This document shows positions 4,734 through 27,003 of a stretch of DNA of 64,000 nucleotides, piece after piece. Under the pieces are notes generated by a model. That model made no database searches and was not told the DNA's origin. It saw only the letters and a program-made list of their open reading frames with translations. The stretch lies in the sequence record AP017925.1; one strand, given 5' to 3'. The number at the start of each line of letters is the position of its first letter. Position 1 is the first letter of the stretch. Both the position numbers and the translations under genes were made by a program.

Positions 4734-4809
4734 TGGCTCCAAGGGCTGGGTTCGAACCAGCGACCAACGGCTTAACAGGCCGCTGCTCTACCGACTGAGC
4801 TACCTCGGA
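4734..4809 (-). tRNA. trnN: tRNA-Asn (anticodon GTT)
   Basis: 76-nt canonical cloverleaf: TCCGAGG/CCTTGGA, D-arm GCTC/GAGC, anticodon loop CT-GTT-AA, T-loop TTCGAAC, encoded CCA. Confidence 0.97.
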
Positions 4810-13295: not shown

Positions 13296-14222
13296 TTAGA
13301 ACCCCTGCATCATCTGGCCAGATGACTGGGCAAGCACCAGATCCGGCAAAGTGGCGATAGCTTCGGTGGCAAGCGAGATGCGCTGGCACAGACCGTGCTG
13401 CGTATTGCCGTAACGACCCGTGGTGTCGGAGTAACCAGCCATCATAAAGCCATAACTGCTGTTCGCCAGAGCATGACTCTCACCGAAGTTGTACGAGTAG
13501 GATGAAGCTACTGTGAAGGCTTGAATCGTTGAACCGCTGACATCAAGACGGACGTTGCGACCAAGCATACCAACGAAGTAGCCGCGAGTGTTATTCACGC
13601 TCATGCCGCACGGAATCTGGATATTGCTGTCCAATGCTGATGGGCCACCAATGCCGGACGCTACCGCCTTCGTCGTGAAGTTGAGCGTAGTAACGGATTG
13701 GTTAGCCGGCGTCAGGAAGAAACCAGCCGAGCCCGTACCGATAGCTTGTCGAGTGCTACCGTAAGGTGCACTGGAAAGCAAACCTTGGCTTGTCGGCGTA
13801 TCGGTCGTCAAATCAACCTTATACCAGTCACCATCGATACTAGCTTGGATCGACGGATTGACTGTAGCCAAAATCCAAGCCTGCGAATAGACGTTCAAGT
13901 CGGACACTGACACACTCGGATCGCGCGCAGTAGTGAACGATGCAGATGCGCTGGCGGTGATGTAGTTGAACTTGTTGTATGCTGTCGTATCACTGATCGA
14001 GAAGTAACCATTGTACGCCCCAGAAATACCAGGGCGGTAATTACGCTGGTAACCAGTGTCATACACGAGCTGCCCTACTTGCGTAGTCGTGTTGAACAGC
14101 TGCACTTTGGAGTGCACAGTAGAGTCTTTGTAGCCACCTTGCAGGTAGCCAATCGAGCGTTGTACCGGTCCCAAGTTCCCCGGGACCGTACGATTTCTCG
14201 TGAGTGCTTTTAAGAGACCCAT
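13296..14222 (-). CDS. Kelch-like beta-propeller protein (~308 aa)
   Basis: Repeats of the type GYLQGGY...VQLFN, GYFVG and GFMMAGY...QRIS. Start moved to MGLLKAL (RBS GAGGG). Confidence 0.6.
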   Translation of the reverse strand: MGLLKALTRNRTVPGNLGPVQRSIGYLQGGYKDSTVHSKVQLFNTTTQVGQLVYDTGYQRNYRPGISGAYNGYFSISDTTAYNKFNYITASASASFTTARDPSVSVSDLNVYSQAWILATVNPSIQASIDGDWYKVDLTTDTPTSQGLLSSAPYGSTRQAIGTGSAGFFLTPANQSVTTLNFTTKAVASGIGGPSALDSNIQIPCGMSVNNTRGYFVGMLGRNVRLDVSGSTIQAFTVASSYSYNFGESHALANSSYGFMMAGYSDTTGRYGNTQHGLCQRISLATEAIATLPDLVLAQSSGQMMQGF

Positions 14223-14233
14223 GTTTCCCTCAA

Positions 14234-14746
14234 TTAGGCAGTATTGGCCAGGATAGCGATCGTCAGATCGGTAAGCGTGGCATCTTGCGTAGATGGCAGG
14301 CACTTCATGGCAAATTGGTCGCCCGGGTTGAGTAACAGGTCAGTTGCCAGAGTAAACGTGCCGTTGGTCGCATTCGCAGCAAAGTTCAGCGTACCAACCT
14401 GTACACCGTTCTTCATAATCGCAATGTCGAACGAAGCAGAGGCTGCAATACTACAGAAAGCAAAGCTACCCGGACAGCCAGCCAGAATCTTGACTGTGCG
14501 AACAGAAATCGCACGCATCAAGATTTCCTGTACGAGCGGCTTGCCGTTGATGAAGTTGTGAAAGTCATAGGTAGACGGACCAGCAGGTCCTTGAATACCC
14601 TGGGAGCCCGTCGCTCCGGTAGCACCCTGCACACCTTGCGGGCCCGCAGGCCCGGCAGGCCCTTGGGGTCCCGCAGGAATAGCGGCTACCTTGCCATCGA
14701 CATAGCCTTGCGATGCGAGCGCTTTGCCATTAACAGGAAAAGTCAT
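14234..14746 (-). CDS. short collagen-repeat structural protein (170 aa)
   Basis: About 11 GXY triplets (GPQGPAGPAGPQGVQGATGATGSQGIQGPAGP) followed by a beta-rich C-terminal domain. Confidence 0.75.
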   Translation of the reverse strand: MTFPVNGKALASQGYVDGKVAAIPAGPQGPAGPAGPQGVQGATGATGSQGIQGPAGPSTYDFHNFINGKPLVQEILMRAISVRTVKILAGCPGSFAFCSIAASASFDIAIMKNGVQVGTLNFAANATNGTFTLATDLLLNPGDQFAMKCLPSTQDATLTDLTIAILANTA

Positions 14747-14827
14747 TTTTATTCCGCCACGAATATGAGTTAAAAGATACTCGACCCCTTATAAGGGTCG
14801 TAAGCTCATAGTAATCTCAGTCGCAAC

Positions 14828-14860
14828 GGCATAAACGGCGGTGGGGGAAACCCACCGCCT
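14828..14860 (-). terminator. intrinsic terminator with TTTATGCC tail
   Basis: GGCATAAA-C-GGCGGTGGG-ggaaa-CCCACCGCC. Confidence 0.8.
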
Positions 14861-14894
14861 TGGGTGCTCCTTAGCCCCTAAGTGCAGCCAGTGT

Positions 14895-15512
14895 TTAAGC
14901 CAGCCACGGTAAAGCAGCAGTGTCTAGGAAATTCATGCTCTTGGCGAAGAAACTAGCGCTGACGAACATGAGAAATCCGTGATACTGTTGAACGAACTTC
15001 GAACTACTTTGTACTAACCCCCTGAAGCCATCACGAACGATGGCCATGCTGCCAAAATTGCTGTCACTGCCACCAGTTAACACATTCTCACTCTCGTGGA
15101 ACACCGGCTCAATGTACGTCTGCCAATAATCCACCGCATTGCCTTCATGCGGCTTGAAAGTGCTTCCATCCCATACAAGCAAGAACGCTTGCCCGCGAAC
15201 CAGAGCTTGATCCGGATCACGCAACAATACTACACGCTCTTTACCTGCAGCGACCAAATAGCGGCTTTCCAGGATACTGTTGCCATCCAATCCGATGCGT
15301 TCACGACAGATATACTGCATCGGTTGACGGCGGTATCGCTGAGGATAGTGCGCACTATCCTCATGTTGACTTGTTAGAAAGTCAAATGGAAGTACCTCAG
15401 TTTGTCGACATAAACGATTGCGCACATTCCGATACAGCATTTGATACGACTGGAACTTCAAACGTTCCTGCATCGGAATTTCACTGCACGCGTCTTCGCA
15501 CATATCTAGCAC
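14895..15512 (-). CDS. hypothetical protein, start uncertain (may begin at 15320)
   Basis: The C-terminal 140 aa look protein-like. The N-terminal part crosses a perfect 24-bp palindrome. Confidence 0.45.
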   Translation of the reverse strand: MLDMCEDACSEIPMQERLKFQSYQMLYRNVRNRLCRQTEVLPFDFLTSQHEDSAHYPQRYRRQPMQYICRERIGLDGNSILESRYLVAAGKERVVLLRDPDQALVRGQAFLLVWDGSTFKPHEGNAVDYWQTYIEPVFHESENVLTGGSDSNFGSMAIVRDGFRGLVQSSSKFVQQYHGFLMFVSASFFAKSMNFLDTAALPWLA

Positions 15513-15819
15513 TTTACCTTTCTTTGAGGTTGTTGGATAGAAAGGATTTATCGAGTTTGGCCTTCTCCTCGCGTTGGCTTTTATTCGCTCTCTGATTCTT
15601 TTTTCTTTATGGCCAGTATTATTGTTGTCAGGAAAAACCCTTCCACCAAGATAGACCTATTGGTAAAAATTACATTTTACTCATCAGACATAGGGAGTGG
15701 CAATTAAGCCACTCCCTGATAACTTAAAAACAGATGCACTCTACGTCCCAGTACCCGCAGTTGGGGCAAGTGAGATCATACGAGCTTACCTTAACTTTTC
15801 GGTATTTCATACCCACCTC

Positions 15820-16167
15820 CTAGCGAGCAATGACAATGCCCTTGACCCGTGTCTTCTTGAGCGGTTTAGCGTATTGCAGTCGCTTAGCTTCAGAGCGCTT
15901 GTGGCGCTCCTTGCGACTCTGCTGCAAGCTCGCTTCCTTAGCCAGCGAGTTCTGCCAACCAGCACGTGACAAGAGTCGCTTGTGCTCTGCAAAGCTCAGA
16001 TCTCGTACAAGGTACTCCAGATTGTGGAGATACGTACCGGGGAACTGTTCCAGCTGATGCATCGAGAGCAGATTAGTTTGTGCAGACCTTCTCAGGCCCT
16101 CGATCAAGGCTCTAGACATAGCCGAACTAGCACCAGAACCACCTATCACTACGACTCTTCGTTCCAT
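15820..16167 (-). CDS. hypothetical basic protein (115 aa)
   Basis: RBS AAGGAAG, K/R-rich C-terminus. Confidence 0.6.
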   Translation of the reverse strand: MERRVVVIGGSGASSAMSRALIEGLRRSAQTNLLSMHQLEQFPGTYLHNLEYLVRDLSFAEHKRLLSRAGWQNSLAKEASLQQSRKERHKRSEAKRLQYAKPLKKTRVKGIVIAR

Positions 16168-16178
16168 TATTCTTCCTT

Positions 16179-16367
16179 CTACTCTTTGGGATGGAAATGC
16201 AGAATAGCCAGCAACTCTTGGCGAGTGTAGTTACCGTTCAGATTCACGTAAGGTACGGAATTACAACGGTCTCCCCAAAACAACTCGGTTAGGTTCAATC
16301 CACTTTTAGTACCCGTACCGCCAAGGATTTTATCAGCTTGTTCATCTGTCATCAGTGACATGATCAC
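16179..16367 (-). CDS. hypothetical protein (62 aa)
   Basis: RBS AAGGAG. Confidence 0.6.
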   Translation of the reverse strand: MIMSLMTDEQADKILGGTGTKSGLNLTELFWGDRCNSVPYVNLNGNYTRQELLAILHFHPKE

Positions 16368-16639
16368 TCCTTTAGTGTCTTCCTTATAATGCTCTATAAC
16401 AGGTTTATTCTCTACTTATAGTCAGAGCTTCGCTAGGTTAGCTAGAGGAGCGCTATGACGCTCCTAGGTACTCTAGAAGGGAAGATAAAGGATGGTCGTG
16501 CCATAGCACGACAAATGTTTACTAGCAAAACGACCCCATTGGGCATCACTCGGTGTCTCTACAACCCGAAGGTCGTAGGGACGCGTCTCAGAGCAGTAGC
16601 AAGCTGCTCCATGGGATAAGGAAGGGGTGTAAAAAAGCA

Positions 16640-16667
16640 GCATAAAGAGAGGGCCGAAGCCCTCTCC
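16640..16667 (-). terminator. intrinsic terminator with TTTATGC tail
   Basis: GCATAAA-GAGAGGGC-cgaa-GCCCTCTC. Confidence 0.8.
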
Positions 16668-16673
16668 TCATTT

Positions 16674-16997
16674 TTAACGCCAGTGGAAACCACCACCGCT
16701 ACCAGTCTTCGGAGGCGGAGGAGTAACACCAGTTGGGTTGACGATGACGTGAACAGACGCACGCGTCATGGCGGGGGTAGCAGGACTCAGTTGTGTTGCT
16801 TTGTTGACGTGAGTCTTACCGGTTGCCTTGAGCGAGTAAATGTTCGACTTGACCTTGGCCGCGTAAAACACGACTCCATGTTTGACAGTTGCAGCAGGAC
16901 TGGGGTACGTCGAGCTGATGCTCCCGTACTGGCCGCCCCAACGGACAGGAGGACCAAGCCCAGTCATGCAACTGACCTTAGCGATCACTCCTGCCAT
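16674..16997 (-). CDS. small fibre-associated protein with C-terminal GGFHWR (copy 3)
   Basis: Ends ...TGSGGGFHWR*. Abuts the upstream 561-aa gene. Confidence 0.7.
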   Translation of the reverse strand: MAGVIAKVSCMTGLGPPVRWGGQYGSISSTYPSPAATVKHGVVFYAAKVKSNIYSLKATGKTHVNKATQLSPATPAMTRASVHVIVNPTGVTPPPPKTGSGGGFHWR

Positions 16998-18683
16998 TTA
17001 GGTCGATGCCTCCACAACAACGTCGCCGATGCCATTGATACTGATCGGAACGAGCGTATCGCCAGTCGTGCTGGTCGTTACCGAAGTGGTCGTTGCGCCA
17101 CCCGCGAAGGTAGCGTTACCACTGGTGATGGCCAGATTCAGGTTCTGAGCGATGCGCACGCCGGACGAGTTCCAGATGTTCACGTGAGCGTTCGTATTGA
17201 TCGCAGCACCACTAAAGGTGTAGATCGAATTGTCGAACGTCACAGATACACTGTTCGGCAGGTTTTCCGGGTTGATGTAATACAGCACTGCACCATTACC
17301 AGACTGGTTACCGCTACTGCCTTCGATCATCCAGATCCGTTCTTGCGAGTCAACGCCAATCGCAATGAACTGACCAGCATACTCGCTCACCTTTTGGAAG
17401 AGCGTGGCATCATTGAACTTGTAGATCGCGATACGGTCAGCCTGACGCACCACCAGACGATCGTGCGCGTCAGACGTGAACATGGTGTGGTAAGCACGAG
17501 CATTATCAGCAATGCTGAATTTCTGAACGAATTTCAGCGTGCTCTTGCTGGTGATTTCGAACAGAACGCCGACGTGGGAAGCCTGGGCTTCCAGGGTACT
17601 GGCTGGCGCTTCCGTGATCGTCACAAGCAGATAAACCTTGCCTGTAGTCGAAGTACGATCGATGATGGATGCGCGGATCTTGCGTGCGCTCGGCTGAGCG
17701 CGACTCAGTGCTGGGAATGCGGACACGCCACCATTGCCAGTCCAGTCGTAAGTGCAGGCCGCCAGCGTAGCGGTCGGCGTGGTCGGTATGGTATCGACAG
17801 TAATGGTCGACACCGAAATATTGTCAGAACCAGCAGTCGACTCAGCTACGAAGAAATAACCGCGCGCCGAAGTCTCGTTGATGATGTGCGACGGAACCGC
17901 ACCGCAGTGGTCAACGCTCGCAGCGCCGGTGATAGCAGCACTCAGAGTCGTCAGCGTTTTTGCTTGACGGTTAATCACGGCAACAGTAGCGGCGTCAGTA
18001 GCTGTTTGCCACTGTTTGTTACTGTAAAGAACAGCGAAGCTGCCCAGAATACCAGTGATTGTCCGACCGTGGGACTGCCCGGAGAACGAACCCATCAGTG
18101 GAGAGTTTGCTGTATTGAAGTCAGCAGCTGCATTCGTAACTTGGCTCGAACCAAAACCCATCGCTTGCAGGATGTTGATGTAAGAGCCGGAGACTGCTGG
18201 CAGCCAAGATGAGATCGCGTTGTACTGATCCAGGGAGCCAGTCCAGCTAGCATAAGAAGCCAGCGCATCCATGGTAGCGCGATCGCGCTTGAACATGCCG
18301 TTACGCGCACCCAACCCGCCACCACCAGCCACCACAACGAAATTCTCGCCGGGTTGCGGCGGGACGTAATTGGGAGTGCCGTTGGCCAGCAGGCCAGCAT
18401 TCATGTAATCGGAGCAACCGCCGCCAGCATCGCTAGCCGCAGCTATAAACATGGCGTTCGGTGTAGCCGAATAGATGACGCGAGGAAGCGCCATGTACCA
18501 GCCTGGACCACCGTCAGGAGTAGTGCCAGAATAAGGTAATGGCGCGCTCGGACCTTGGCGATAGTTGTCGCCAAGCGGAGCCAGCGTGGTGGGGTTATAC
18601 GGGGAACCGTCGATATAGAGAGTGCCGTCAATGTCGACGACGTTCATCCCCAAACCACGACGCAGGGTTTTGAACTTAATCAT
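16998..18683 (-). CDS. putative tail fibre / receptor-binding protein, paralogue C (561 aa)
   Basis: N-terminus MIKFKTLRRGLGMNVVDIDGTLYIDGSPY and an Ig-like C-terminus shared with 19005..20702. S/T/A/G-rich. Confidence 0.65.
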   Translation of the reverse strand: MIKFKTLRRGLGMNVVDIDGTLYIDGSPYNPTTLAPLGDNYRQGPSAPLPYSGTTPDGGPGWYMALPRVIYSATPNAMFIAAASDAGGGCSDYMNAGLLANGTPNYVPPQPGENFVVVAGGGGLGARNGMFKRDRATMDALASYASWTGSLDQYNAISSWLPAVSGSYINILQAMGFGSSQVTNAAADFNTANSPLMGSFSGQSHGRTITGILGSFAVLYSNKQWQTATDAATVAVINRQAKTLTTLSAAITGAASVDHCGAVPSHIINETSARGYFFVAESTAGSDNISVSTITVDTIPTTPTATLAACTYDWTGNGGVSAFPALSRAQPSARKIRASIIDRTSTTGKVYLLVTITEAPASTLEAQASHVGVLFEITSKSTLKFVQKFSIADNARAYHTMFTSDAHDRLVVRQADRIAIYKFNDATLFQKVSEYAGQFIAIGVDSQERIWMIEGSSGNQSGNGAVLYYINPENLPNSVSVTFDNSIYTFSGAAINTNAHVNIWNSSGVRIAQNLNLAITSGNATFAGGATTTSVTTSTTGDTLVPISINGIGDVVVEAST

Positions 18684-18700
18684 GAAGCATCCTTAAAAGG

Positions 18701-19003
18701 TTATCTCCAATGGAAGCCACCGGCTTTTCCAGTTGGGTAGATGGGGTTAGCGGGTCCGGAAACGTTGGTGGTGGAAATCGCTTTTGCTACGGCGCGCTTT
18801 TGGTTGACCGGTGACGTCAGAGAAACCTTATAGCAGTGAGCACTCGCCTTAGCACGAATTCTGTCATTCAGCGATTTCGAGTCCATTACTTTTGCCGATG
18901 CTAGAACGTAAGCAGTCGGTTGGCGAGAACGAGCTGTCGTTCTCGCCTTCAAAGCAGGACCTTTACCATCCAACACGAGAGTGTGAAGGATGATGCCTGG
19001 CAT
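18701..19003 (-). CDS. small fibre-associated protein with C-terminal GGFHWR (copy 2)
   Basis: Start moved to MPGIILH (1 nt after the upstream stop). Ends ...TGKAGGFHWR*. Confidence 0.7.
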   Translation of the reverse strand: MPGIILHTLVLDGKGPALKARTTARSRQPTAYVLASAKVMDSKSLNDRIRAKASAHCYKVSLTSPVNQKRAVAKAISTTNVSGPANPIYPTGKAGGFHWR

Positions 19004-19004
19004 A

Positions 19005-20702
19005 TTAAGTCGTAGCCTCGATAACCACGTCACCAATGCCGATGATGTTCACCGGAACTTGCAGCGTAGCTGTAGTCAATGTGGTTACGGTCGTTTGCGT
19101 CGTACCATCTTGGAACTTCGCATTGCCACTCGTGATCGTGATCGTCACGTTGCCGGCTTTGCGTACACCAGCGGCCGTGCGGAGATCCACGTTCAGGTTC
19201 GCAGCTACCGGAGTGCCTGCGAATTGATACGTACCGCTATCGAATGAAACCGACAGGCTATTTGGAATACTTTCCGGATTCACGTAGTAGAGCGACGGAC
19301 CTTGTGCAGACAGGTTACCGGCCGTTACATCAATCATCCAGATGCGTTCGGTGCTATCCACACCCACGCCGCCCCAAACACCGCTGTACTCAGCCAATTT
19401 GGCGAAGTAAGTACCGTCGGTAAACTTATAGACAGCGATACGGTCAACTTGCTTCACGATCAGACGATCGTGGGTATCGCTGGTCCACAACGTACCGTTA
19501 GCGCGCGCGTTGTCAGCCAAACTGATTGACTGTACGAACTTCAGACTGGTGGGTGTGGTGATCTCGAACAGCAGACCCTTCATAGCTGCTTGAGCTTCGA
19601 AGGATGACGAAGTCGGTTCAGTCACCATTACGAAGAGATAGCGTTTACCTGCTGTAGCTGTGCGGTCAATGATGGATGCGCGGATCTTGCGCGCGCTGGA
19701 CGTGTTGCGACTCAGCGCGGTAAAGGCAGTCACACCGCCATTGTTGGTCCAATCAATGGTTGCCACTTGATTGGAGGCAGTCGGAGTACCAGTACAATCC
19801 ACCGACACTACGTTAATAGCGACGTTATCGCCACCGGCAATCGACTCCGGCGCGTAGAAATAACCCGTGCTGGCGCCAGTATAGGTCATTTCCGAAGCAA
19901 CGCTGCCGGCGCGATCCTGCGACGCCGCGCCAGTAACTGCTGTGCTTACCGCAGTAGCTACTCTGGTTTGGCGATTTACTACGTGCAAAGTATTCGCGGC
20001 AGTGGCCGGAGAAGCATTGGCTAGCGAACTGAAGAATACTGCGTAACTACCAAGAATACCTACACACTGACGGATCTTGAAGTCATTACCGATGGAAGTA
20101 CCGAAATACACTGATGGGGCGGTTGTGAAGTCAGCCGGTATGTTTTCGACGATATTCGAATAAGCATCTGCGCGTTGCGCCCACATCAGGTAGCTACCGC
20201 TGACGTTGGGTAGCCACATGGACATATGCATGTACCAGCCCGATTGGTTGGCGTAAGAACCACTACCTACACCAGGCATGGCAGCGAGCGCATCCATCGT
20301 AGCGCGATCGCGCTTGAACATGCCGCCGGTATAGCCCAAGCCAGCACCGCCCGCCACGACGAGGAAGTTTTCACCGGACTGCAGCGGCACATATCCAGCA
20401 GTACCATTAGCAGTCAAACCAGCGTTCATGTAGTCGCTGTTATTAGCGCCACAATCAGAAGTCATATTGGCGACTACACCGTTAGCAGGACACCAGATGG
20501 TGGCGCGCTGTAGTGCCATGAACGGTGGGAATGCCCAATCCGTACCAAGAGCGTCGAGCTGTCTGGCCGGGCCTTGTTTGTAGTTGTCGCCAAGCGGAGC
20601 GAGTGTTTGAAGGTTGTAAGGAGAGCCATCGATGTACAGAATGCCATCGATTTCTACAACGTTCATGCCGAGCCCTCGGCGGCAATTCTTGAACTTGATC
20701 AT
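19005..20702 (-). CDS. putative tail fibre / receptor-binding protein, paralogue B (565 aa)
   Basis: Long identical blocks shared with paralogue C (GMFKRDRATMDALA, SARKIRASIIDRT, QERIWMI/TERIWMI). Confidence 0.65.
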   Translation of the reverse strand: MIKFKNCRRGLGMNVVEIDGILYIDGSPYNLQTLAPLGDNYKQGPARQLDALGTDWAFPPFMALQRATIWCPANGVVANMTSDCGANNSDYMNAGLTANGTAGYVPLQSGENFLVVAGGAGLGYTGGMFKRDRATMDALAAMPGVGSGSYANQSGWYMHMSMWLPNVSGSYLMWAQRADAYSNIVENIPADFTTAPSVYFGTSIGNDFKIRQCVGILGSYAVFFSSLANASPATAANTLHVVNRQTRVATAVSTAVTGAASQDRAGSVASEMTYTGASTGYFYAPESIAGGDNVAINVVSVDCTGTPTASNQVATIDWTNNGGVTAFTALSRNTSSARKIRASIIDRTATAGKRYLFVMVTEPTSSSFEAQAAMKGLLFEITTPTSLKFVQSISLADNARANGTLWTSDTHDRLIVKQVDRIAVYKFTDGTYFAKLAEYSGVWGGVGVDSTERIWMIDVTAGNLSAQGPSLYYVNPESIPNSLSVSFDSGTYQFAGTPVAANLNVDLRTAAGVRKAGNVTITITSGNAKFQDGTTQTTVTTLTTATLQVPVNIIGIGDVVIEATT

Positions 20703-20726
20703 GCCTTTACCCTTTACGAGTGAAAC

Positions 20727-20757
20727 AGGCCACGCTATAAAGCGTGGCCTTTATGCC
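20727..20757 (+). terminator. hairpin with plus-oriented TTTATGCC tail
   Basis: AGGCCACGCT-ataa-AGCGTGGCCT-TTATGCC between two minus-strand genes. Confidence 0.6.
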
Positions 20758-20764
20758 GCTACTC

Positions 20765-21181
20765 TTACGGCTGTTCTTGTTCAGTCACCGGAGCAGACAA
20801 GATGGCGGTCACGCGATCTTCAGTCAGCAGATTTTGGGTCACGTAGAACTCCATTCCAGCCTTGACATCCGGATCTTCCAGATCAATGAACTTAGCCAGC
20901 ATCAGTCGATCATAGATCGCACGCACAGTCGGAACCGTCTGGGCAGCAGCCAGAATGCCGGCGTGCTCAGCCAGAGTGAAGCGACGTACCAGCGCCAGCG
21001 TAGTGATCTTGCGCGACAGAGTGCCTTGCATATTCTTGATCTCCGAAGTAGCCCAGGCTTCCGCAGTTGCTGCGTCAGCCCATGGTTGTTGAGTGTTGGG
21101 GTCAAACGGCTGCACCACGGTGTCAACACCATTGCATTGGATGGTCAGCACGCCATTGACGTAAGTAAACGTGTAATTCAT
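20765..21181 (-). CDS. putative fibre assembly/chaperone-like protein (138 aa)
   Basis: QPFDPNTQQPWADAATAEAWA and RKITTLALVRRFT...FIDLEDP, embedded in the fibre cluster. Confidence 0.5.
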   Translation of the reverse strand: MNYTFTYVNGVLTIQCNGVDTVVQPFDPNTQQPWADAATAEAWATSEIKNMQGTLSRKITTLALVRRFTLAEHAGILAAAQTVPTVRAIYDRLMLAKFIDLEDPDVKAGMEFYVTQNLLTEDRVTAILSAPVTEQEQP

Positions 21182-21235
21182 TTTCCTATCCTTTTACTGG
21201 ATGAAAGGGGAACCCGAAAGCTCCCCTTGTATCGA

Positions 21236-21517
21236 TTACCGCCAGTGGAACCCACCGCCTTTGCCGCCGCCATTCGACATTTTGACAAAATTGCAGCGAG
21301 AAGCAATCGTTGCAGCCACAGGCACAATCCCAGGCGCAACCAGTTTAACACTGGCCTTGACGCGTTGAGTCAAGAGCGGTTTCCCGCTCACGACTTTTGC
21401 TTTCACGCGCTTAAATGCCAGTTGGTTGACGGTGGCCTGGCCATGCACGCTAACCACTTGGTTCTTTACAGTCCCAGGGTCAAACGTGACGCGAGACGTT
21501 ACCGTTGCTCTGGTCAT
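21236..21517 (-). CDS. small fibre-associated protein with C-terminal GGFHWR (copy 1)
   Basis: ATGA overlap with the 552-aa gene. Ends ...GGGKGGGFHWR*. Confidence 0.7.
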   Translation of the reverse strand: MTRATVTSRVTFDPGTVKNQVVSVHGQATVNQLAFKRVKAKVVSGKPLLTQRVKASVKLVAPGIVPVAATIASRCNFVKMSNGGGKGGGFHWR

Positions 21518-23172
21518 GATGTAGCCGCATCGATCGAAATATCACCAGGAGCGGTGATAGTGAATGGAACCAGCGTCGGGCCAGTAGCAGACGTGGTGAA
21601 CGTCGTCTGAGACAGCGTCACGTTCGTCGACGGCGTCAGCGTCACGTTTGCAGCAACATAGTTACCATTCGCATCCGTTACGGAGACCGTCAGTGTACCG
21701 CTAGCCGGCGCGCCGCTGTACGAGTAGCTGCCGCTATCAAACGACAGGTTGATCGTGTTAGCGGTGCCAGTCGGGTTGATGTACCACAGCTCCCATTCAC
21801 ACATCGTTGCGGGCGTAGCCGAAATCGGGTTGATGTACCAGAAGCGACCAGCGGAGTCAAAGCCATGCGACCAAGCACCGTAATACTGAGTAGCGCTGAC
21901 ACGACCCAGTGTAACAGTGTTGGTCTTATTCAGGACACCACCAGTACCGACCGACCAGAACTCGTAGCGGTCATCGTAGGCAACCACAAAGTTCATGCCA
22001 TTGTCGTCTGCCGTGGTCATCGAGCGCGGGCTCGGTGCCAAGTTATACGTGCCCACGTAAGTGGCTGTATTTTTGTCGGTCAGCTTGTACACGTACATTT
22101 TCTGCAATGCCGTCGTCGGAGTGGCAGCACTGTTTTCGAAGCCGATCACCAGTAGATATTTGTTACCATCCGTGTGGTTGATCAGTTGTACACGCATCAC
22201 ACCGACTTGCGTCAGTGTCATTGGGTTTTGATCCAAGGTCACCAAGTTATTGGTGATCGCTGGTGTTGCGTCCAGGCTACTCATAGCTACGCGATGGATT
22301 TCCATCGCAGTAGCGGAGCGCCAGATCACGTAGGAACTTTTCTCGTTAGAGAGAGTATCCCAAGCAAAGGACGGAGCAGATTGCGCATAACCCATGCCGG
22401 TGCTAATGGTAGAGGCTCCCGCCGGTGCACCCAGCGAGGTCGAGTAGGCAATTGCTGCCAGCGTTGCTTTAGCAACGGCTCGAACCTCCATTGTAGCCTG
22501 AATCGCGCTGGCGCCAACATACGTGTCGACAAAATACCAACGATTGGTGTCTTCGCCGACACGATGCGCGGCGAACATGGGTCCCAGAGCCCTAGAGCCA
22601 AACAAAAGCGTTGTTTGGCCAGCAGTGGTAGTGCCAACAGGAAAGCTTTCAACGCTCGCAGACAGATACGAGTTGCTGTAGTGCCGAGTCATAGCAAGCC
22701 GGCCAGCATTCACCGATGGTAACCAAACAGCTTCATGGTTCCACAGAGAAGTCGTATAGGTACTCGCACTAGCCGGATTACTGACGTTGCCGGTATTCGG
22801 GTCCCAGTCGTAAACCATAGCCAAACCAGCGTCGGAGAAGTTCCGGATATTGCCATTCGGCAACGTCTGATGGCAAATCTCCACGCCGTTCCAGCGACCG
22901 CAAAGCACCATATCGAAATCGCTTGCGATCTGGCCCGGCGAACCTCCAGCAACGTTTGGTGTCATTGGCTGATAACCGCGCATCATTCGAATAGTCCATG
23001 CGTTGTTATACGCCACCGGTGACATGCTCGATGTCATCGGAGCCGCAGGAGCGCCGATGACTTCACTCAGGTCACTTACCCGGTACACTTTGTTATCGAT
23101 GTGCAGGTTATTACCCAACTGAACAGCGAGGCGGTTGGGGAACATGCCCCGATAAGTCTTAAGTTTAGGCAT
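21514..23172 (-). CDS. putative tail fibre / receptor-binding protein, paralogue A (552 aa, divergent)
   Basis: Similar N-terminus (LHIDNKVY vs LYIDGSPY) and C-terminus (WYINP...INLSFDSGSYSYSGAP...GDISIDAA). TAATG-coupled to the collagen fibre gene. Confidence 0.65.
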   Translation of the reverse strand: MPKLKTYRGMFPNRLAVQLGNNLHIDNKVYRVSDLSEVIGAPAAPMTSSMSPVAYNNAWTIRMMRGYQPMTPNVAGGSPGQIASDFDMVLCGRWNGVEICHQTLPNGNIRNFSDAGLAMVYDWDPNTGNVSNPASASTYTTSLWNHEAVWLPSVNAGRLAMTRHYSNSYLSASVESFPVGTTTAGQTTLLFGSRALGPMFAAHRVGEDTNRWYFVDTYVGASAIQATMEVRAVAKATLAAIAYSTSLGAPAGASTISTGMGYAQSAPSFAWDTLSNEKSSYVIWRSATAMEIHRVAMSSLDATPAITNNLVTLDQNPMTLTQVGVMRVQLINHTDGNKYLLVIGFENSAATPTTALQKMYVYKLTDKNTATYVGTYNLAPSPRSMTTADDNGMNFVVAYDDRYEFWSVGTGGVLNKTNTVTLGRVSATQYYGAWSHGFDSAGRFWYINPISATPATMCEWELWYINPTGTANTINLSFDSGSYSYSGAPASGTLTVSVTDANGNYVAANVTLTPSTNVTLSQTTFTTSATGPTLVPFTITAPGDISIDAATS

Positions 23173-26100
23173 TAGTTGTACTCCAAAGTAATCAACATGT
23201 CGGAACCGCTGCTACCCACTACTTGGAGGGAAACATTGCTTCCGGCAGGGAGACTGTTAGTTTCAGCCACATACATGTTGGTTTGACCGGCTGCCAGTGT
23301 GAGCGAGATATTATCGCTCGTACCGTCGGCATGATGGACAACGGCATTCACCACGAGGTCAGTGGTAGCTACCGTACCCAGCTGCAGCCGGATACCAGCC
23401 AAGGCATGGGCATCTGCAGGCGGATACCAATTCATCGGAATCGAAGTGGTCTGAGTGATCGGACCATCGAAGGCAGCGGTCTTCTGACGGGTGAGCGTCA
23501 GCGCAGACCAAGCACCATTCTGACGAACGTAAACACCGTTGTCCTTCGGTGCCTCCAGAACATCTACCGGAATCCAGTTACCATCCTTGCGAGCGTAGAG
23601 CACGTCGTCAAAGTTGGCATCGTAGACGTTACCACCACCAAGGTAACCCAACGCGCTCCAGGCCACCGTAGAGGTTTTCTGGAAGAACTGCAGCGATGCC
23701 GAGTTGAGGAAGTAATCCCCTACAGTGCCGTCGGCAGCCGATGGGTTGCGGGACAGTACGATCCAGCGAGTGCCCGGATCACCCTTGACACCTTGTACGC
23801 CCTGAATACCCTGAGCGCCTTGAATACCTTGAATACCCTGCAAGCCACGCACACCCTGCGGGCCTTGGATCGGACCAACATCGATGAATGCTGTACCTGT
23901 CCATGCCCAACCATGCAGAGTGTCCTGAGCAATGTACATATCGCCAGGATTGGTGGAGGTAGCAGGCAGGTTAGCACTGGTATTAACCGTACCCAAGATT
24001 TTTACACCAGGACCCATCGGACCTTGGTCACCTTGCGGACCCTGAGCACCAGCTGCGCCAGGATCGCCTTGTGGTCCCTGAGCACCAGTATCGCCCTTTA
24101 CGCCCTGCAGGCCTTGGATACCTTGGTCACCCTTGTCACCCTTCCACTGCCCGGCATCAAGCCAGCTGACACCGTTCCACACGAAGAGATGATCGCCTAC
24201 GCGATAAGCATCGCCGATGTTGTTGGTGCCGCTGACAGGCAGGGAATTTTGGTCAGGCAGAATACCAAGCACCTTGATGCTGTTACCGGTATCGCCCTTA
24301 TCACCTTTGTCACCTTTATCGCCCTTCAGGCCCTGGATACCCTGAATACCTTGGATACCTTGTAGACCTTGTGCACCAGTGTCGCCTTTATCGCCTTTGA
24401 CACCCTGTAAACCCTGAGGACCTACCGGACCTTGAATGACACCCATGTCCGTGTACTGTGTACCATCCCAGCCCCAGAAGTGGCCGCCAATCAAATAACC
24501 CTCACCCAGCGTACCGGTAGCCGGCAGTTGCGAGGTATCTGTGAGTGTGCCAACGATACTGATGCCGGGACCCATCGGACCCTGCACACCCTGCGGACCC
24601 TGGATACCTTGGTCCCCTTGAATACCCTGGATACCCTGATCGCCTTTGTCACCTTTAATACCCTGGATACCTTGAATACCCTGGATACCTTGGTCCCCTT
24701 GAGCACCACGGAACGGACCAGCGTTCGTCCAATCAGTGCCGAGGAAGATATAAAGGTCGGTGCCTACAATGTAAGCGTCTTCCTGCGCGGGATTGGCAGG
24801 TAGTGACGGAACGTCCGCCACGACACCTTTGATCGCCAAACCACGCCCCATCGGACCCTGAGGACCGATATCGCCCTTAGCACCGACCAGCGAATTCAGC
24901 CAAGAATTCAGGTCACCTACGTAGCCATTTTCAACAGCCACTTGGTAAGCCGTAAGGCCAGCCGTGCCTTGCAGCGAAGCGATCCACTGGTCAATAGTAC
25001 CAGTGAAACCACCAGCGACGGCAATATCAAAGGCAGAAGCACCGGTGGTGCCGGTATCGCCTTTCAAGCCCTGCAGACCCTGCAGACCTTGAGGTCCAGT
25101 ATCACCTTTCGGACCTTGTACCAAACCGCAATCAACGAAGGCGGTGCCGGTCCACGCCCAGCCGTGCAGTGTATCGAGGGCGATATACATATCGCCCGGA
25201 TCAGTGGAGGTTGCCGGGAGATCCGTGCTGCTCGGAACCGTGCCAAGAATCTTGACGCCCGGACCCATATCGCCCTTGTCGCCTTTCAGGCCTTGGGGAC
25301 CAACGGGACCAATCGGTCCAATCAGAGTAGCAAGCCAGTCGGTCTGCGAGCCGGTAAAGCCATTGGCGACTGCCACATCAAAAGCAGACTTACCAACCAG
25401 CGAAGCCAACCACGCAGTCTGACCGCCTACGAAACCATTCGCTTGCGCAATCTGGTACGAAGACTTACCTTGCAGCGAAGCGATCCACTGCGACAACGTC
25501 ATCGATTGCGGGATCAGGCCAGCATCCTTGGCCAGTTGGTAAGCAGACTTACCTGCCGGACCCACCTGACCCACCGGAACCCAGTTCGTAGCGTCCCACA
25601 CCCACATCACCGAGTCGATGATATACGCGTCGCCCGGAGAGTTGTTCTGCGCCGGAAGATCGCTGGTGGATTGGAACGAACCCTGAACTTTCAGGCCGAT
25701 ACCATCTGCGCCATGCAGAGAAGCCAGCCAATCGGCTTCCGTACCGCCAAAACCAGCCAATTGTGCCAGTTCATAGGCACTCTTGCCTTCGGGACCTTGC
25801 AGGTTGCCGAGATTCACCCACTGACCGCCCGTCACAGCCCAGAATTGCGGCCCGATCAGATAGCAATCGCCTTCTTGCGACGTAGTAACGTCAGGCAATT
25901 GAGATTGATCGGCCACAGCACCAAGCAAACGAGCACCGTTACCGATCGGACCTTGTGCTCCGGTGTCGCCTTTGTCACCTTTCGGGCCTTTGAGCGACGC
26001 CGACCACTCAGCTTCAGTACCCGTAAAGCCACCGGCAACAGCGATATCGTAAGCCGATGGGCCAGTATCGCCTTTGACACCTTGGATACCCTGATCACCC

Positions 26101-26444
26101 GGGATACCTTGGATACCTTGGTCACCTTTATCGCCCTTGTCGCCCTTCAGGCTGGCGACCCAGTCTGCTTCAGTACCGACAAAGCCGAGAGCGACAGCAG
26201 CGTCGTAAGCGCTCTTGCCATCCAAAGAAGCCAGCCATTCAGCTTCGGTGCCTACGTAGCCGGCTTCAACAGCGACCTGATAGGCGCTCTTACCAGCTAC
26301 GAACAGTTGATCCAGAGTGAACTTGACGTTCTTACCATCCTGGACTGCCTCCACCACTTCTGCACCAGTGATCGGTGCAGCAGGCGGCAGGTCGGTAATC
26401 CGATAATACAAGGAGGGATCGAGAGAATTGGGATCGCTCATCAT
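23172..26444 (-). CDS. collagen-like tail fibre protein (1090 aa)
   Basis: Many GXY runs, GKSAY(Q/E/D)xA...G(F/Y)xG...WLASL repeats, and about 6 globular G-x-LP-GD-Y-W modules. Confidence 0.85.
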   Translation of the reverse strand: MMSDPNSLDPSLYYRITDLPPAAPITGAEVVEAVQDGKNVKFTLDQLFVAGKSAYQVAVEAGYVGTEAEWLASLDGKSAYDAAVALGFVGTEADWVASLKGDKGDKGDQGIQGIPGDQGIQGVKGDTGPSAYDIAVAGGFTGTEAEWSASLKGPKGDKGDTGAQGPIGNGARLLGAVADQSQLPDVTTSQEGDCYLIGPQFWAVTGGQWVNLGNLQGPEGKSAYELAQLAGFGGTEADWLASLHGADGIGLKVQGSFQSTSDLPAQNNSPGDAYIIDSVMWVWDATNWVPVGQVGPAGKSAYQLAKDAGLIPQSMTLSQWIASLQGKSSYQIAQANGFVGGQTAWLASLVGKSAFDVAVANGFTGSQTDWLATLIGPIGPVGPQGLKGDKGDMGPGVKILGTVPSSTDLPATSTDPGDMYIALDTLHGWAWTGTAFVDCGLVQGPKGDTGPQGLQGLQGLKGDTGTTGASAFDIAVAGGFTGTIDQWIASLQGTAGLTAYQVAVENGYVGDLNSWLNSLVGAKGDIGPQGPMGRGLAIKGVVADVPSLPANPAQEDAYIVGTDLYIFLGTDWTNAGPFRGAQGDQGIQGIQGIQGIKGDKGDQGIQGIQGDQGIQGPQGVQGPMGPGISIVGTLTDTSQLPATGTLGEGYLIGGHFWGWDGTQYTDMGVIQGPVGPQGLQGVKGDKGDTGAQGLQGIQGIQGIQGLKGDKGDKGDKGDTGNSIKVLGILPDQNSLPVSGTNNIGDAYRVGDHLFVWNGVSWLDAGQWKGDKGDQGIQGLQGVKGDTGAQGPQGDPGAAGAQGPQGDQGPMGPGVKILGTVNTSANLPATSTNPGDMYIAQDTLHGWAWTGTAFIDVGPIQGPQGVRGLQGIQGIQGAQGIQGVQGVKGDPGTRWIVLSRNPSAADGTVGDYFLNSASLQFFQKTSTVAWSALGYLGGGNVYDANFDDVLYARKDGNWIPVDVLEAPKDNGVYVRQNGAWSALTLTRQKTAAFDGPITQTTSIPMNWYPPADAHALAGIRLQLGTVATTDLVVNAVVHHADGTSDNISLTLAAGQTNMYVAETNSLPAGSNVSLQVVGSSGSDMLITLEYN
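23770..26300 (-). repeat. coding repeats: collagen GXY (9-bp periodic GGATACCTT-type), GKSAY repeats and globular modules
   Basis: Visible as repeated ccctggataccttg / tcgcctttgtcacc at DNA level. All in frame within the fibre gene. Confidence 0.85.
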
Positions 26445-26454
26445 TTATCCTTTA

Positions 26455-27003
26455 TTAAGAAATTGTGTTTTCGAGCACGCGAATGCGGAGATTCTGATCC
26501 GTCGGAATCTGACCATTTTCTCCACGTGCAGCCGGTAAAGGAGCATTCGGAGTGTAGGGGAAGAAGTAATCCCCCGGTAGCCATGCAAGCGACGTATCGG
26601 TAATCGTTACGGTAATGCCGTTGATCGGCAGAGTGTCGAGCGGAGTGTCTTCTACCTCGGAGGTCACCAGATCCAGGCCGAGGCCGGCGTTGATCTGGGG
26701 CAGGATAGCGTGCACGGTTGTTGGGAAGGTGATGGGATCAAACGGAACCAACTCCCCCGGGGGAAGACGTTTCAATGCATCGAAGCTCAGTCGCTTGTAA
26801 TTGATGGCCAACGGTTCATCCTGGCGCGTCGTCGTGTATGCTTCGGCCTGCACCGTGGTAGAACCTTCAACGGGTGCAGAACCGAGTTCCGGCGCACCAA
26901 AATTGAAATTCACGGCGCTGGGAAGAACCGGCTGTTGCGCACTACGGATCAACTGTGACAGTCGCGCCTGGCTCGTGCCAGCATAGGGCTTGATACGAGA
27001 CAT
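26455..27003 (-). CDS. putative virion structural protein (~182 aa)
   Basis: Start moved to MSRIKPY. Contains INYKRLSF and ends with a motif (RGENGQIPTDQNLRIRVLE) typical of fibre-adjacent proteins. Confidence 0.55.
   Translation of the reverse strand: MSRIKPYAGTSQARLSQLIRSAQQPVLPSAVNFNFGAPELGSAPVEGSTTVQAEAYTTTRQDEPLAINYKRLSFDALKRLPPGELVPFDPITFPTTVHAILPQINAGLGLDLVTSEVEDTPLDTLPINGITVTITDTSLAWLPGDYFFPYTPNAPLPAARGENGQIPTDQNLRIRVLENTIS

What the first reader, a model, noticed from the sequence alone, without database searches (positions are those of the whole stretch)
16674..23172. Three tandem (large fibre-like + small GGFHWR-tailed) gene pairs
Seen: three ~555-aa paralogues with conserved N- and C-termini, each directly followed (ATGA overlap or 0-1 nt gap) by a 93-107-aa protein. 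The small proteins are otherwise hard to align but all end in G-x-x-G-G-F-H-W-R-stop. An invariant C-terminal hexapeptide on divergent bodies suggests a docking, sorting or processing signal. Inference: interchangeable receptor-binding cassettes in which the GGFHWR tail plugs into a shared site (the partner propeller, the collagen fibre, or a baseplate socket).
Basis: partly seen in the sequence, partly recalled or inferred. Interest (0 to 1): 0.65.

Follow-up and report, generated by a model that had tools for sequence, protein, structure and literature searches.

The report
Phage fibre-tip genes with tail-tagged partners
A giant phage of the plant pathogen Ralstonia carries three copies of a two-gene unit, a propeller-shaped probable host-binding protein and a small partner whose last four residues form a conserved tag; the same pairing occurs in very different phages, so it looks like an undescribed docking system.

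Summary
The window is Ralstonia jumbo phage RP31/RP12. On the minus strand, three paralogous 552-565-aa genes are each followed by a 93-107-aa gene, with an ATGA overlap or a 0-1 nt gap. All three small genes end in GGFHWR-stop. The tail codons differ at synonymous sites, so selection acts on the peptide.

New findings:
- **Large proteins:** they model as a beta-propeller plus a C-terminal Ig-like domain. They belong to an uncharacterised family of 296 representative clusters, with no Pfam, NCBIfam or PDB relative.
- **Conserved module:** the pair sits in the order fibre with a shared C-terminal domain, then propeller protein, then small partner, then often an ORF147-like protein. Copy number is 1 to 3 among relatives.
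- **The tail:** the hexapeptide is RP12-specific. In 19 distinct partners, F at -4 and W at -2 are present in 19 of 19. This includes four distant lineages ending in FYWG whose bodies are unrelated.

Best reading: these are alternative fibre-tip cassettes. The fast-evolving partner probably docks inside the module, most likely on its propeller protein, through a tethered F-x-W-x C-terminal peptide. The docking itself is inferred, not shown. I rate it a new variant of the known fibre-plus-partner theme, of moderate interest.

The parts
23172..26444 (-). ORF150, a collagen-like tail fibre (1090 aa). Its last ~100 aa form a domain shared by the proteins upstream of large homologues in other phages. 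Its stop overlaps the start of large3 by 1 nt.
   Evidence: G-X-Y repeats are visible. Collagen-like adhesin profiles match below their cut-offs. It was detected in RP31 virions by MS (PMC5468394 Table S3).
21514..23172 (-). large3 (552 aa, RP31 ORF149): beta-propeller plus C-terminal Ig-like domain, a probable fibre-tip or receptor-binding protein. It is the orthologue of the single copy found in related phages.
   Evidence: AF2 model with pLDDT 69 and pTM 0.71, all-beta. Foldseek hits are propellers. Orthologues are 43-46% identical. Weak Big_1 match at residues 492-551.
21236..21517 (-). small3 (93 aa, pI 12): partner of large3, with an ATGA overlap. It is a shortened orthologue of the 176-183-aa partners of related phages. 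The tail GGFHWR is encoded at 21239-21256.
   Evidence: AF2 gives pLDDT 45.6, so no confident autonomous fold.
20765..21181 (-). ORF147 (138 aa), the conserved fourth gene of the module. Its N-terminal ~60-aa domain recurs as a 58-86-aa gene after the pair in distant phages.
   Evidence: Syntenic homologues are 55-74% identical. Short versions occur in L024, L027, L029 and BpSp gp251. No Pfam or NCBIfam hit.
19005..20702 (-). large2 (565 aa, ORF146), a paralogue of large1 (55% identical).
   Evidence: PHROG 20698.
18701..19003 (-). small2 (100 aa from its ATG, pI 10.9): partner of large2, 1 nt gap, not annotated in GenBank. Tail encoded at 18704-18721. Its stop lies 17 nt before the start of large1.
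16998..18683 (-). large1 (561 aa, ORF145).
   Evidence: A 73%-identical orthologue with its own small partner occurs in metagenomic contigs L005 and L006.
16674..16997 (-). small1 (107 aa, pI 10.5, no Asp or Glu): partner of large1, 0 nt gap. Tail encoded at 16677-16694.
   Evidence: Its orthologue P0002 is 62% identical and ends in GGFHWS. dN/dS is 0.26.
16642..16671 (-). Terminator-like hairpin (13 pairs followed by a T run) directly after small1. It probably ends the transcription unit.
   Evidence: The sequence is visible.

Best explanation
The region holds three copies of a conserved phage host-recognition module. Each copy encodes an acidic ~555-aa protein, made of a beta-propeller with a C-terminal Ig-like domain, that most likely forms the distal receptor-binding tip of a tail fibre. 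Each also encodes a translationally coupled, fast-evolving small partner.

The partner has no confident fold of its own. I propose it is a stoichiometric cognate subunit, acting as a clamp or adaptor, that attaches inside the module and most probably to its own propeller protein. Attachment would be through the extreme C-terminal peptide F-x-W-x with its free carboxylate, presented on a Gly/Pro-rich tether. An N-terminal strand-like segment and the variable body would lie along the partner.

RP31/RP12 has amplified the pair to three copies. The conserved N-termini of the large proteins would let them use the same attachment point, probably the conserved C-terminal domain of the collagen-like fibre ORF150. 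That would give the virion alternative tips.

Shown: gene structure, coupling, paralogy, purifying selection, fold class, synteny, distribution of the tail, and presence of the fibre in virions.

Inferred: the physical docking and its site, the receptor-binding role, whether the partner stays in the virion, and sharing of one attachment point.
For: **The genes are real and coupled.**
- The junctions are ATGA, TAAATG and TAATATG in RP31, and ATGA or GTGA in relatives.
- dN/dS is 0.25-0.26 for the small genes and 0.15-0.23 for the large ones.
- The tail is identical in peptide but differs in codons.

**The tail is a family feature.**
- Among 19 distinct partners, F at -4 and W at -2 occur in 19 of 19.
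- Position -3 carries six different residues (H, R, G, S, A, Y), and so does position -1 (R, G, H, S, N, T).
- Four distant lineages (L022, L024, L026, L027) end in FYWG. Their bodies are unrelated and their pI ranges from 4.1 to 8.9.
- Chance gives about 5.6e-4 per gene.

**The motif is always exactly one residue from the C-terminus and follows a Gly/Pro-rich stretch**. This is typical of a tethered terminal docking peptide.

**The partner alone gives no confident fold.** The model has pLDDT 45.6, with the last 17 residues as coil.

**The only neighbours conserved across all contexts** are the propeller protein and the upstream fibre's C-terminal domain.

**The large protein looks like a fibre tip.**
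- It models as a propeller plus an Ig-like domain.
- Its gene is coupled to a virion fibre gene.
- In L022 it sits between a gpJ-type tail gene and the lysis genes.

**The cassettes behave as modules.** Copy number is 1, 2 or 3 among relatives. The N-terminal 40 columns of large1 and large2 are 84% identical, against 55% overall.
Against: - No interaction was tested.
- RP31 virion MS found ORF150 but none of ORF144-149. That survey excised gel bands and found only 32 proteins, so the absence is weak evidence.
- Three distant lineages (L029, L031 and Bacillus phage BpSp) have a different downstream partner without the tail. The tail is therefore not obligatory for the propeller family.
- No residue of the large protein was found to be specific to tail-bearing lineages (low power).
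- The low-confidence model of the small protein may only reflect a shallow alignment.
- The identical tails of all three RP12 partners, including small3 whose orthologues carry other tails, would also fit a single shared socket elsewhere.
Confidence: 0.5

Rival explanations
1. The small proteins are non-structural assembly chaperones in the manner of tail-fibre assembly proteins. The tail holds the chaperone on the nascent propeller protein during folding or oligomerisation, and the chaperone is absent from the finished virion.
For: The gene order, with a small gene directly after the fibre-tip gene, is the classical chaperone position. The small proteins were not detected in virions. Each cassette keeps its own partner, as cognate chaperones do.
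Against: There is no similarity to any chaperone profile. The partner has a low-complexity, extremely basic body with no confident fold, unlike known folded chaperones. The virion MS also missed the large proteins, so it cannot discriminate. The module has a second small conserved protein, ORF147-like, that could equally be the chaperone.
Confidence: 0.25
2. The tail plugs into one shared socket outside the pair, on the collagen fibre or the baseplate. The small protein would then be the adaptor that mounts each propeller protein on the virion.
For: All three RP12 tails are identical over nine positions of the pattern G-x-x-G-G-F-H-W-R. small3's orthologues in other phages have different tails, as expected if the three compete for one site. 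The fibre's C-terminal domain is conserved across the module.
Against: The motif is kept in phages with unrelated tails, which rules out a lineage-specific baseplate site. In the L005 phage the two partners carry different tails, HFGWR and GFHWS. The conserved N-termini of the large proteins are a more usual mounting element.
Confidence: 0.15
3. The small protein is the actual adhesin. It would be tethered to the propeller scaffold by its tail, and its hypervariable, charge-biased body would contact the host surface.
For: The body evolves faster than the large protein: 32-62% identity against 51-73% in the same pairs. Charge varies by lineage, with pI 10.5-12 in all Ralstonia-phage partners and 4.1-8.9 elsewhere.
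Against: dN/dS of about 0.25 shows no sign of overall diversifying selection. No fold is predicted. Propeller plus Ig-like proteins are themselves typical carbohydrate binders.
Confidence: 0.07
4. The tail is a processing or sorting signal, for cleavage or export, and not a docking peptide.
For: Its position at the very C-terminus is strictly conserved.
Against: There is no signal peptide or membrane segment, no associated protease or transporter gene in the conserved module, and no match to any known sorting-signal family.
Confidence: 0.03

Closest known systems
Tail fibre plus downstream assembly or adhesin partner pairs (lambda Stf/Tfa, Mu S/U, P2 H/G, T4 gp37/gp38). From established knowledge.
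   Same: A host-recognition protein gene is followed directly by a small cognate partner gene. Pairs are exchanged and multiplied as cassettes. The partner binds the distal part of the fibre.
   Different: There is no sequence or profile similarity. The large protein is a propeller plus an Ig-like domain, not a trimeric beta-helical fibre. The partner has no confident fold, and its conserved element is a four-residue C-terminal peptide rather than a conserved domain.
Beta-propeller receptor-binding proteins and glycosidases of phages: Staphylococcus phage phi11 Gp45 platform (PMC4901313, listed) and endosialidase-type six-bladed propellers.
   Same: A propeller domain lies at the host-facing end of a tail appendage. 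The best PDB fold matches are sialidase or pseudaminidase propellers that also carry an Ig-like domain.
   Different: TM-scores are only 0.30-0.38. There are no Asp-box motifs and no sialidase or BNR profile hit. No partner with a terminal tag is known for those proteins.
Propeller domains that read a motif fixed to the free C-terminus, such as the COPI alpha/beta-prime WD40 domains binding dilysine ends. From established knowledge; this is an analogy of mechanism only.
   Same: A short motif sits at a fixed distance from the C-terminus on otherwise unrelated proteins, and a propeller protein is the constant partner.
   Different: It is a eukaryotic trafficking system with no homology. Contact between tail and propeller is not shown here.
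Phages with several alternative receptor-binding proteins encoded in tandem, such as the multi-tailspike phages CBA120 and PhiK64-1 (from established knowledge). Also jumbo phage PaBG, which has three structural relatives of the large protein.
   Same: Tandem paralogous host-recognition genes have conserved attachment ends and divergent binding parts. Copy number differs between close relatives.
   Different: Here every copy brings its own small tagged partner. How the three tips are mounted is unknown.

Membership tests
Tail-fibre assembly chaperones (Tfa / Caudo_TAP type) | Significant match of the small protein to the family profile | tested here: not met
   No Pfam or NCBIfam family at E<=0.1 for any of the three small proteins. 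The only PHROG hits are unannotated families, apart from one weak match (E 0.0036) to another unannotated PHROG. No PDB sequence relative.
Tail-fibre assembly chaperones (Tfa / Caudo_TAP type) | Gene lies immediately downstream of the fibre or receptor-binding gene | tested here: met
   Overlap or 0-1 nt gap in all three pairs and in relatives.
Tail-fibre assembly chaperones (Tfa / Caudo_TAP type) | Binds the fibre tip and is needed for its folding | not testable with these tools
   No multimer prediction or biochemical data are available.
Sialidase / BNR six-bladed propellers | Repeated Asp-box motifs and a profile match | tested here: not met
   No strict Asp-box in any of seven large proteins. 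No Pfam hit.
Sialidase / BNR six-bladed propellers | Fold similarity of the propeller | tested here: inconclusive
   The top PDB hits are 3h6j, 2bzd and 2w38, but with TM 0.30-0.35, and generic WD40 propellers score alike. The model pLDDT is 69.
Bacterial Ig-like domain group 1 (Big_1) | Profile score at or above Pfam's gathering score | tested here: not met
   Only large3 matches, at 21.1 bits against a cut-off of 34.9. The model shows a seven-strand beta-sandwich at residues 473-551.
Uncharacterised propeller-protein family delimited here (PHROGs 20698, 38139, 22549) | Profile match over the last blades and the C-terminal domain, plus the shared N-terminal segment | tested here: met
   296 representative clusters at E<=1e-3 and 60 at E<=1e-10. 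Residues D439, R443 and W445 (large3 numbering) are invariant in 15 of 15 sampled members. N-termini are compared.
Uncharacterised propeller-protein family delimited here | Downstream partner ending in F-x-W-x | tested here: met
   3 of 3 in the window. All Ralstonia-phage relatives have it, as do 4 of 7 distant lineages with a complete partner gene.
Collagen-like phage tail fibre (ORF150) | G-X-Y repeat tracts and presence in the virion | tested here: met
   Repeats are visible. Collagen-like adhesin profiles match at E down to 4e-48 but below their cut-offs. Five unique peptides were found in RP31 virions.
Terminal-peptide docking on a propeller (mechanistic analogy) | Motif at a fixed distance from the free C-terminus on unrelated bodies | tested here: met
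   19 of 19 partners carry F at -4 and W at -2.
Terminal-peptide docking on a propeller (mechanistic analogy) | Physical contact between the tail and the propeller protein | not testable with these tools
   Only single-chain prediction is offered.

The most novel reading that the evidence does not exclude
F-x-W-x at the free C-terminus is a portable docking code. It couples small, rapidly diverging and otherwise unrelated proteins to a widespread, undescribed family of propeller-type fibre-tip proteins in many unrelated phages. In RP31/RP12 the three identical tails would make the partners interchangeable among three tips, giving combinatorial host-recognition heads on one collagen-like fibre.
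Probability: 0.3. Interest if true: 0.7.

Novelty: new variant of a known kind. Interest (0 to 1): 0.55.

Why it matters
Host recognition is the least predictable part of phage genomes. Here a whole family of probable fibre-tip proteins (296 representative clusters) has no annotation, no domain model and no solved structure.

A four-residue terminal tag marks the cognate partner gene, which gives a simple sequence handle. It can be used to find these modules, to annotate short genes that are currently missed (small2 is absent from GenBank), and to choose complexes for structural study.

It also shows how a jumbo phage of an important plant pathogen may have come to carry several alternative tips by cassette amplification.

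Tried and rejected
- **DNA-level repeat or recombination site as the cause of the shared tail:** rejected, because the three tails differ at synonymous sites and the flanks do not align.
- **Exact GGFHWR-stop elsewhere:** IMG/VR gave only RP12 itself plus short chance segments. All were out-of-context or off-frame, and none lay near a large-family gene.
- **Related loci by back-translated patterns:** IMG/VR returned only the phage itself. JGI metagenomes, a second subgroup in IMG/VR and GTDB genomes returned nothing. One alignment was too diverse to use. Relatives came from the protein searches and exact-sequence contig look-ups instead.
- **Pfam, PHROGs, NCBIfam and PDB sequence searches:** these gave no informative family.
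- **Natural large-small fusions:** none of 148 family representatives ends in an aromatic-x-W-x tail.
- **Residues of the large protein specific to tail-bearing lineages:** nothing convincing was found. R65 is only a weak candidate.
- **Structure of small3:** the model has low confidence, so it was not sent to fold search.
- **Programmed frameshift joining large and small:** not supported, because the small frames extend at most 15 codons upstream of their starts.
- **Literature:** nothing was found on the motif or the family.


Full report
**Identity of the window.** The region is 100% identical to Ralstonia phage RP31 (AP017925) and nearly identical to RP12. These are phiKZ-related jumbo phages of Ralstonia solanacearum (PMC5468394). 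Window coordinate equals the RP31 coordinate minus 124000. All genes discussed lie on the minus strand.

**Observation.** The gene order is as follows:
- ORF150, a collagen-like fibre, at 23172-26444
- large3 at 21514-23172
- small3 at 21236-21517
- ORF147 at 20765-21181
- large2 at 19005-20702
- small2 at 18701-19003
- large1 at 16998-18683
- small1 at 16674-16997
- a terminator-like hairpin at 16642-16671

The large-small junctions are ATGA for pair 3, TAATATG for pair 2 and TAAATG for pair 1. large1 and large2 are 55% identical, and large3 is about 26% identical to large1. The N-terminal 40 columns of large1 and large2 are 84% identical.

The small proteins are 26-32% identical to small1. 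All three end in G-x-x-G-G-F-H-W-R. The tail codons differ at synonymous positions, including three different Arg codons, so the peptide itself is under selection. F-x-W-x ends are expected in 0.24 of the window's 421 long stop-to-stop segments. Three are seen, and they are exactly these genes. GenBank lacks small2, and RP31 annotates small3 from an internal start.

**The small proteins.**
- They are extremely basic, with pI 10.5-12 and no Glu.
- They match no Pfam, NCBIfam or PDB sequence.
- A model of small3 built on 13 sequences has pLDDT 45.6, with long strands and a coil tail. No autonomous fold can be claimed.
- They are real genes. The orthologue of small1 in metagenomic contigs (P0002, 62% identical, ending in GGFHWS) gives dN/dS 0.26, and long-type orthologues give 0.25. 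The large genes give 0.15-0.23.
- In every pair compared, the small protein has diverged more than its large neighbour: 32-62% identity against 51-73%.

**The large proteins.**
- A model of large3 (pLDDT 69, pTM 0.71) is all-beta, with a six- or seven-bladed propeller and a seven-strand sandwich at residues 473-551.
- PDB fold matches are propellers. The top ones are sialidase or pseudaminidase propellers that also carry an Ig-like domain, but TM-scores are only 0.30-0.38. There are no Asp-boxes.
- In the viral structure library the nearest models are the RP12 paralogues, uncultured phage proteins, a 644-aa protein, and three proteins of jumbo phage PaBG.
- A profile search found 296 representative clusters at E<=1e-3. 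None of those tested has a Pfam domain, and there is no PDB sequence relative.
- Among cultured phages only RP12/RP31, FLC1-1B/FLC4-3B and, distantly, two Bacillus jumbo phages carry a member.

**A conserved module.** The same order recurs in FLC4-3B and in contigs L003, L004 and L008. The Logan contigs of P0008 and P0010, for which only gene calls were available, show it too. The order is a long fibre gene, a ~560-aa large gene, an overlapping 176-183-aa small gene, and a 137-138-aa ORF147 homologue.

L005 and L006 add a second pair of the large1 type. Copy number is therefore 1, 2 or 3 among relatives.

In distant phages the large homologue is again preceded by a protein whose last ~100 residues resemble the C-terminus of ORF150. 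It is followed by a coupled small gene, and often by a 58-86-aa gene resembling the N-terminus of ORF147. In L022 the unit lies between a gpJ-type tail gene and the lysis genes, which is the usual place for side fibres.

**The tail across the family.** I collected nineteen distinct partners: three in the window, P0002, FLC gp158, the L005 long type, P0011-P0019, and the partners in L022, L024, L026 and L027.
- F at -4 is present in 19 of 19, and W at -2 in 19 of 19.
- Position -3 is H in 4, R in 5, G in 3, S in 2, A in 1 and Y in 4.
- Position -1 is R in 10, G in 4, H in 2, and S, N and T in 1 each.
- The four distant partners end in FYWG. Their bodies are unrelated and their pI ranges from 4.1 to 8.9, so basicity is a trait of the Ralstonia-phage clade only.
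- A Gly/Pro-rich stretch precedes the tail in nearly all of them.
- Three distant lineages (L029, L031 and BpSp gp252) have other partners without the tail, two of them with an Ig-like repeat pattern. One partner, in L023, is cut off by the contig end.
- The exact RP12 hexapeptide was found nowhere else in a meaningful context.

**Interpretation.** A motif fixed one residue from the free C-terminus, on a flexible tether, on unrelated bodies, always next to the same protein family, is best explained as a docking peptide. Its receptor lies inside the module. That receptor is most likely the propeller protein, and possibly the fibre's C-terminal domain.

A lineage-specific baseplate socket does not fit the distribution. 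The role of the large proteins as fibre tips rests on four points: coupling to a fibre gene detected in virions, the L022 context, the fold class, and cassette behaviour.

The published virion MS did not detect ORF144-149. It was a band-excision survey that identified 32 proteins, so this absence is weak evidence.

Three questions stay open:
- whether the partner stays in the particle or acts only during assembly
- whether the identical RP12 tails reflect one shared site
- whether the small protein contributes to host contact

**Comparison with known systems.** The arrangement works like the classical fibre-plus-partner cassettes (lambda Stf/Tfa, Mu S/U, T4 gp37/gp38; established knowledge). 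It fails the tested membership criteria of those families. The propeller is not a demonstrable sialidase. Reading of a terminal motif by a propeller has precedents in eukaryotic trafficking, as an analogy only. I therefore file it as a new variant of a known kind.

Noticed in passing
window 18701-19003 (-) and 21236-21517 (-): small2 is not annotated in the RP31 or RP12 GenBank records. small3 is annotated in RP31 from an internal start (73 aa), although the RP12 table lists 93 aa.
   Followed up: yes
window 14234-14746 (-) and 13296-14174 (-): ORF140 is a 170-aa collagen-like protein detected in virions. Its C-terminal ~100 aa loosely resemble the ORF150 C-terminal domain type. It is followed by ORF139 (292 aa in GenBank). 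This may be a second, short fibre module.
   Followed up: partly
window 20765-21181 (-); L024 5751-5963; L027 7358-7546; L029 7536-7721; L030 4902-5159: The N-terminal ~60 residues of ORF147 recur as a separate small acidic gene after the large-small pair in very distant phages, including Bacillus phage BpSp gp251. Function is unknown and there is no family hit.
   Followed up: partly
L029 6849-7520; L030 4345-4902; L023 2178-2582: Some distant members of the propeller family are followed by a different partner, with an Ig-like repeat pattern near its end and no F-x-W-x tail. This suggests at least two partner types for one family.
   Followed up: partly
L002 (FLC4-3B) 13756-18398 compared with window 16674-20702: Downstream of the ORF147 homologue, FLC4-3B carries a 182-aa gene and a second 1356-aa collagen-like fibre. 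RP31 carries cassettes 2 and 1 at that position, and a 182-aa gene (ORF151) upstream of ORF150. This indicates a rearrangement of the fibre region between the two phage groups.
   Followed up: no
window 23172-26444 (-): ORF150 is built of about ten repeats. Each is a G-X-Y collagen tract followed by a short globular segment with a recurring aromatic-rich pattern.
   Followed up: no
window ~21200-21235 (-): A GC-rich hairpin follows the small3 stop. The terminator scan did not call it, because its T run is too weak. It may still separate the ORF150-large3-small3 unit from the downstream genes.
   Followed up: no
window 16683-18212 (+), 24942-26603 (+), 23223-24365 (+): Long antisense open frames (380-553 codons) lie opposite the large and fibre genes. 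They have low-complexity translations and are best read as by-products of codon bias, not as genes.
   Followed up: no
window ~4734-4809 (-): A tRNA-Asn (GTT) is annotated in the RP31 record, upstream of the fibre region.
   Followed up: no
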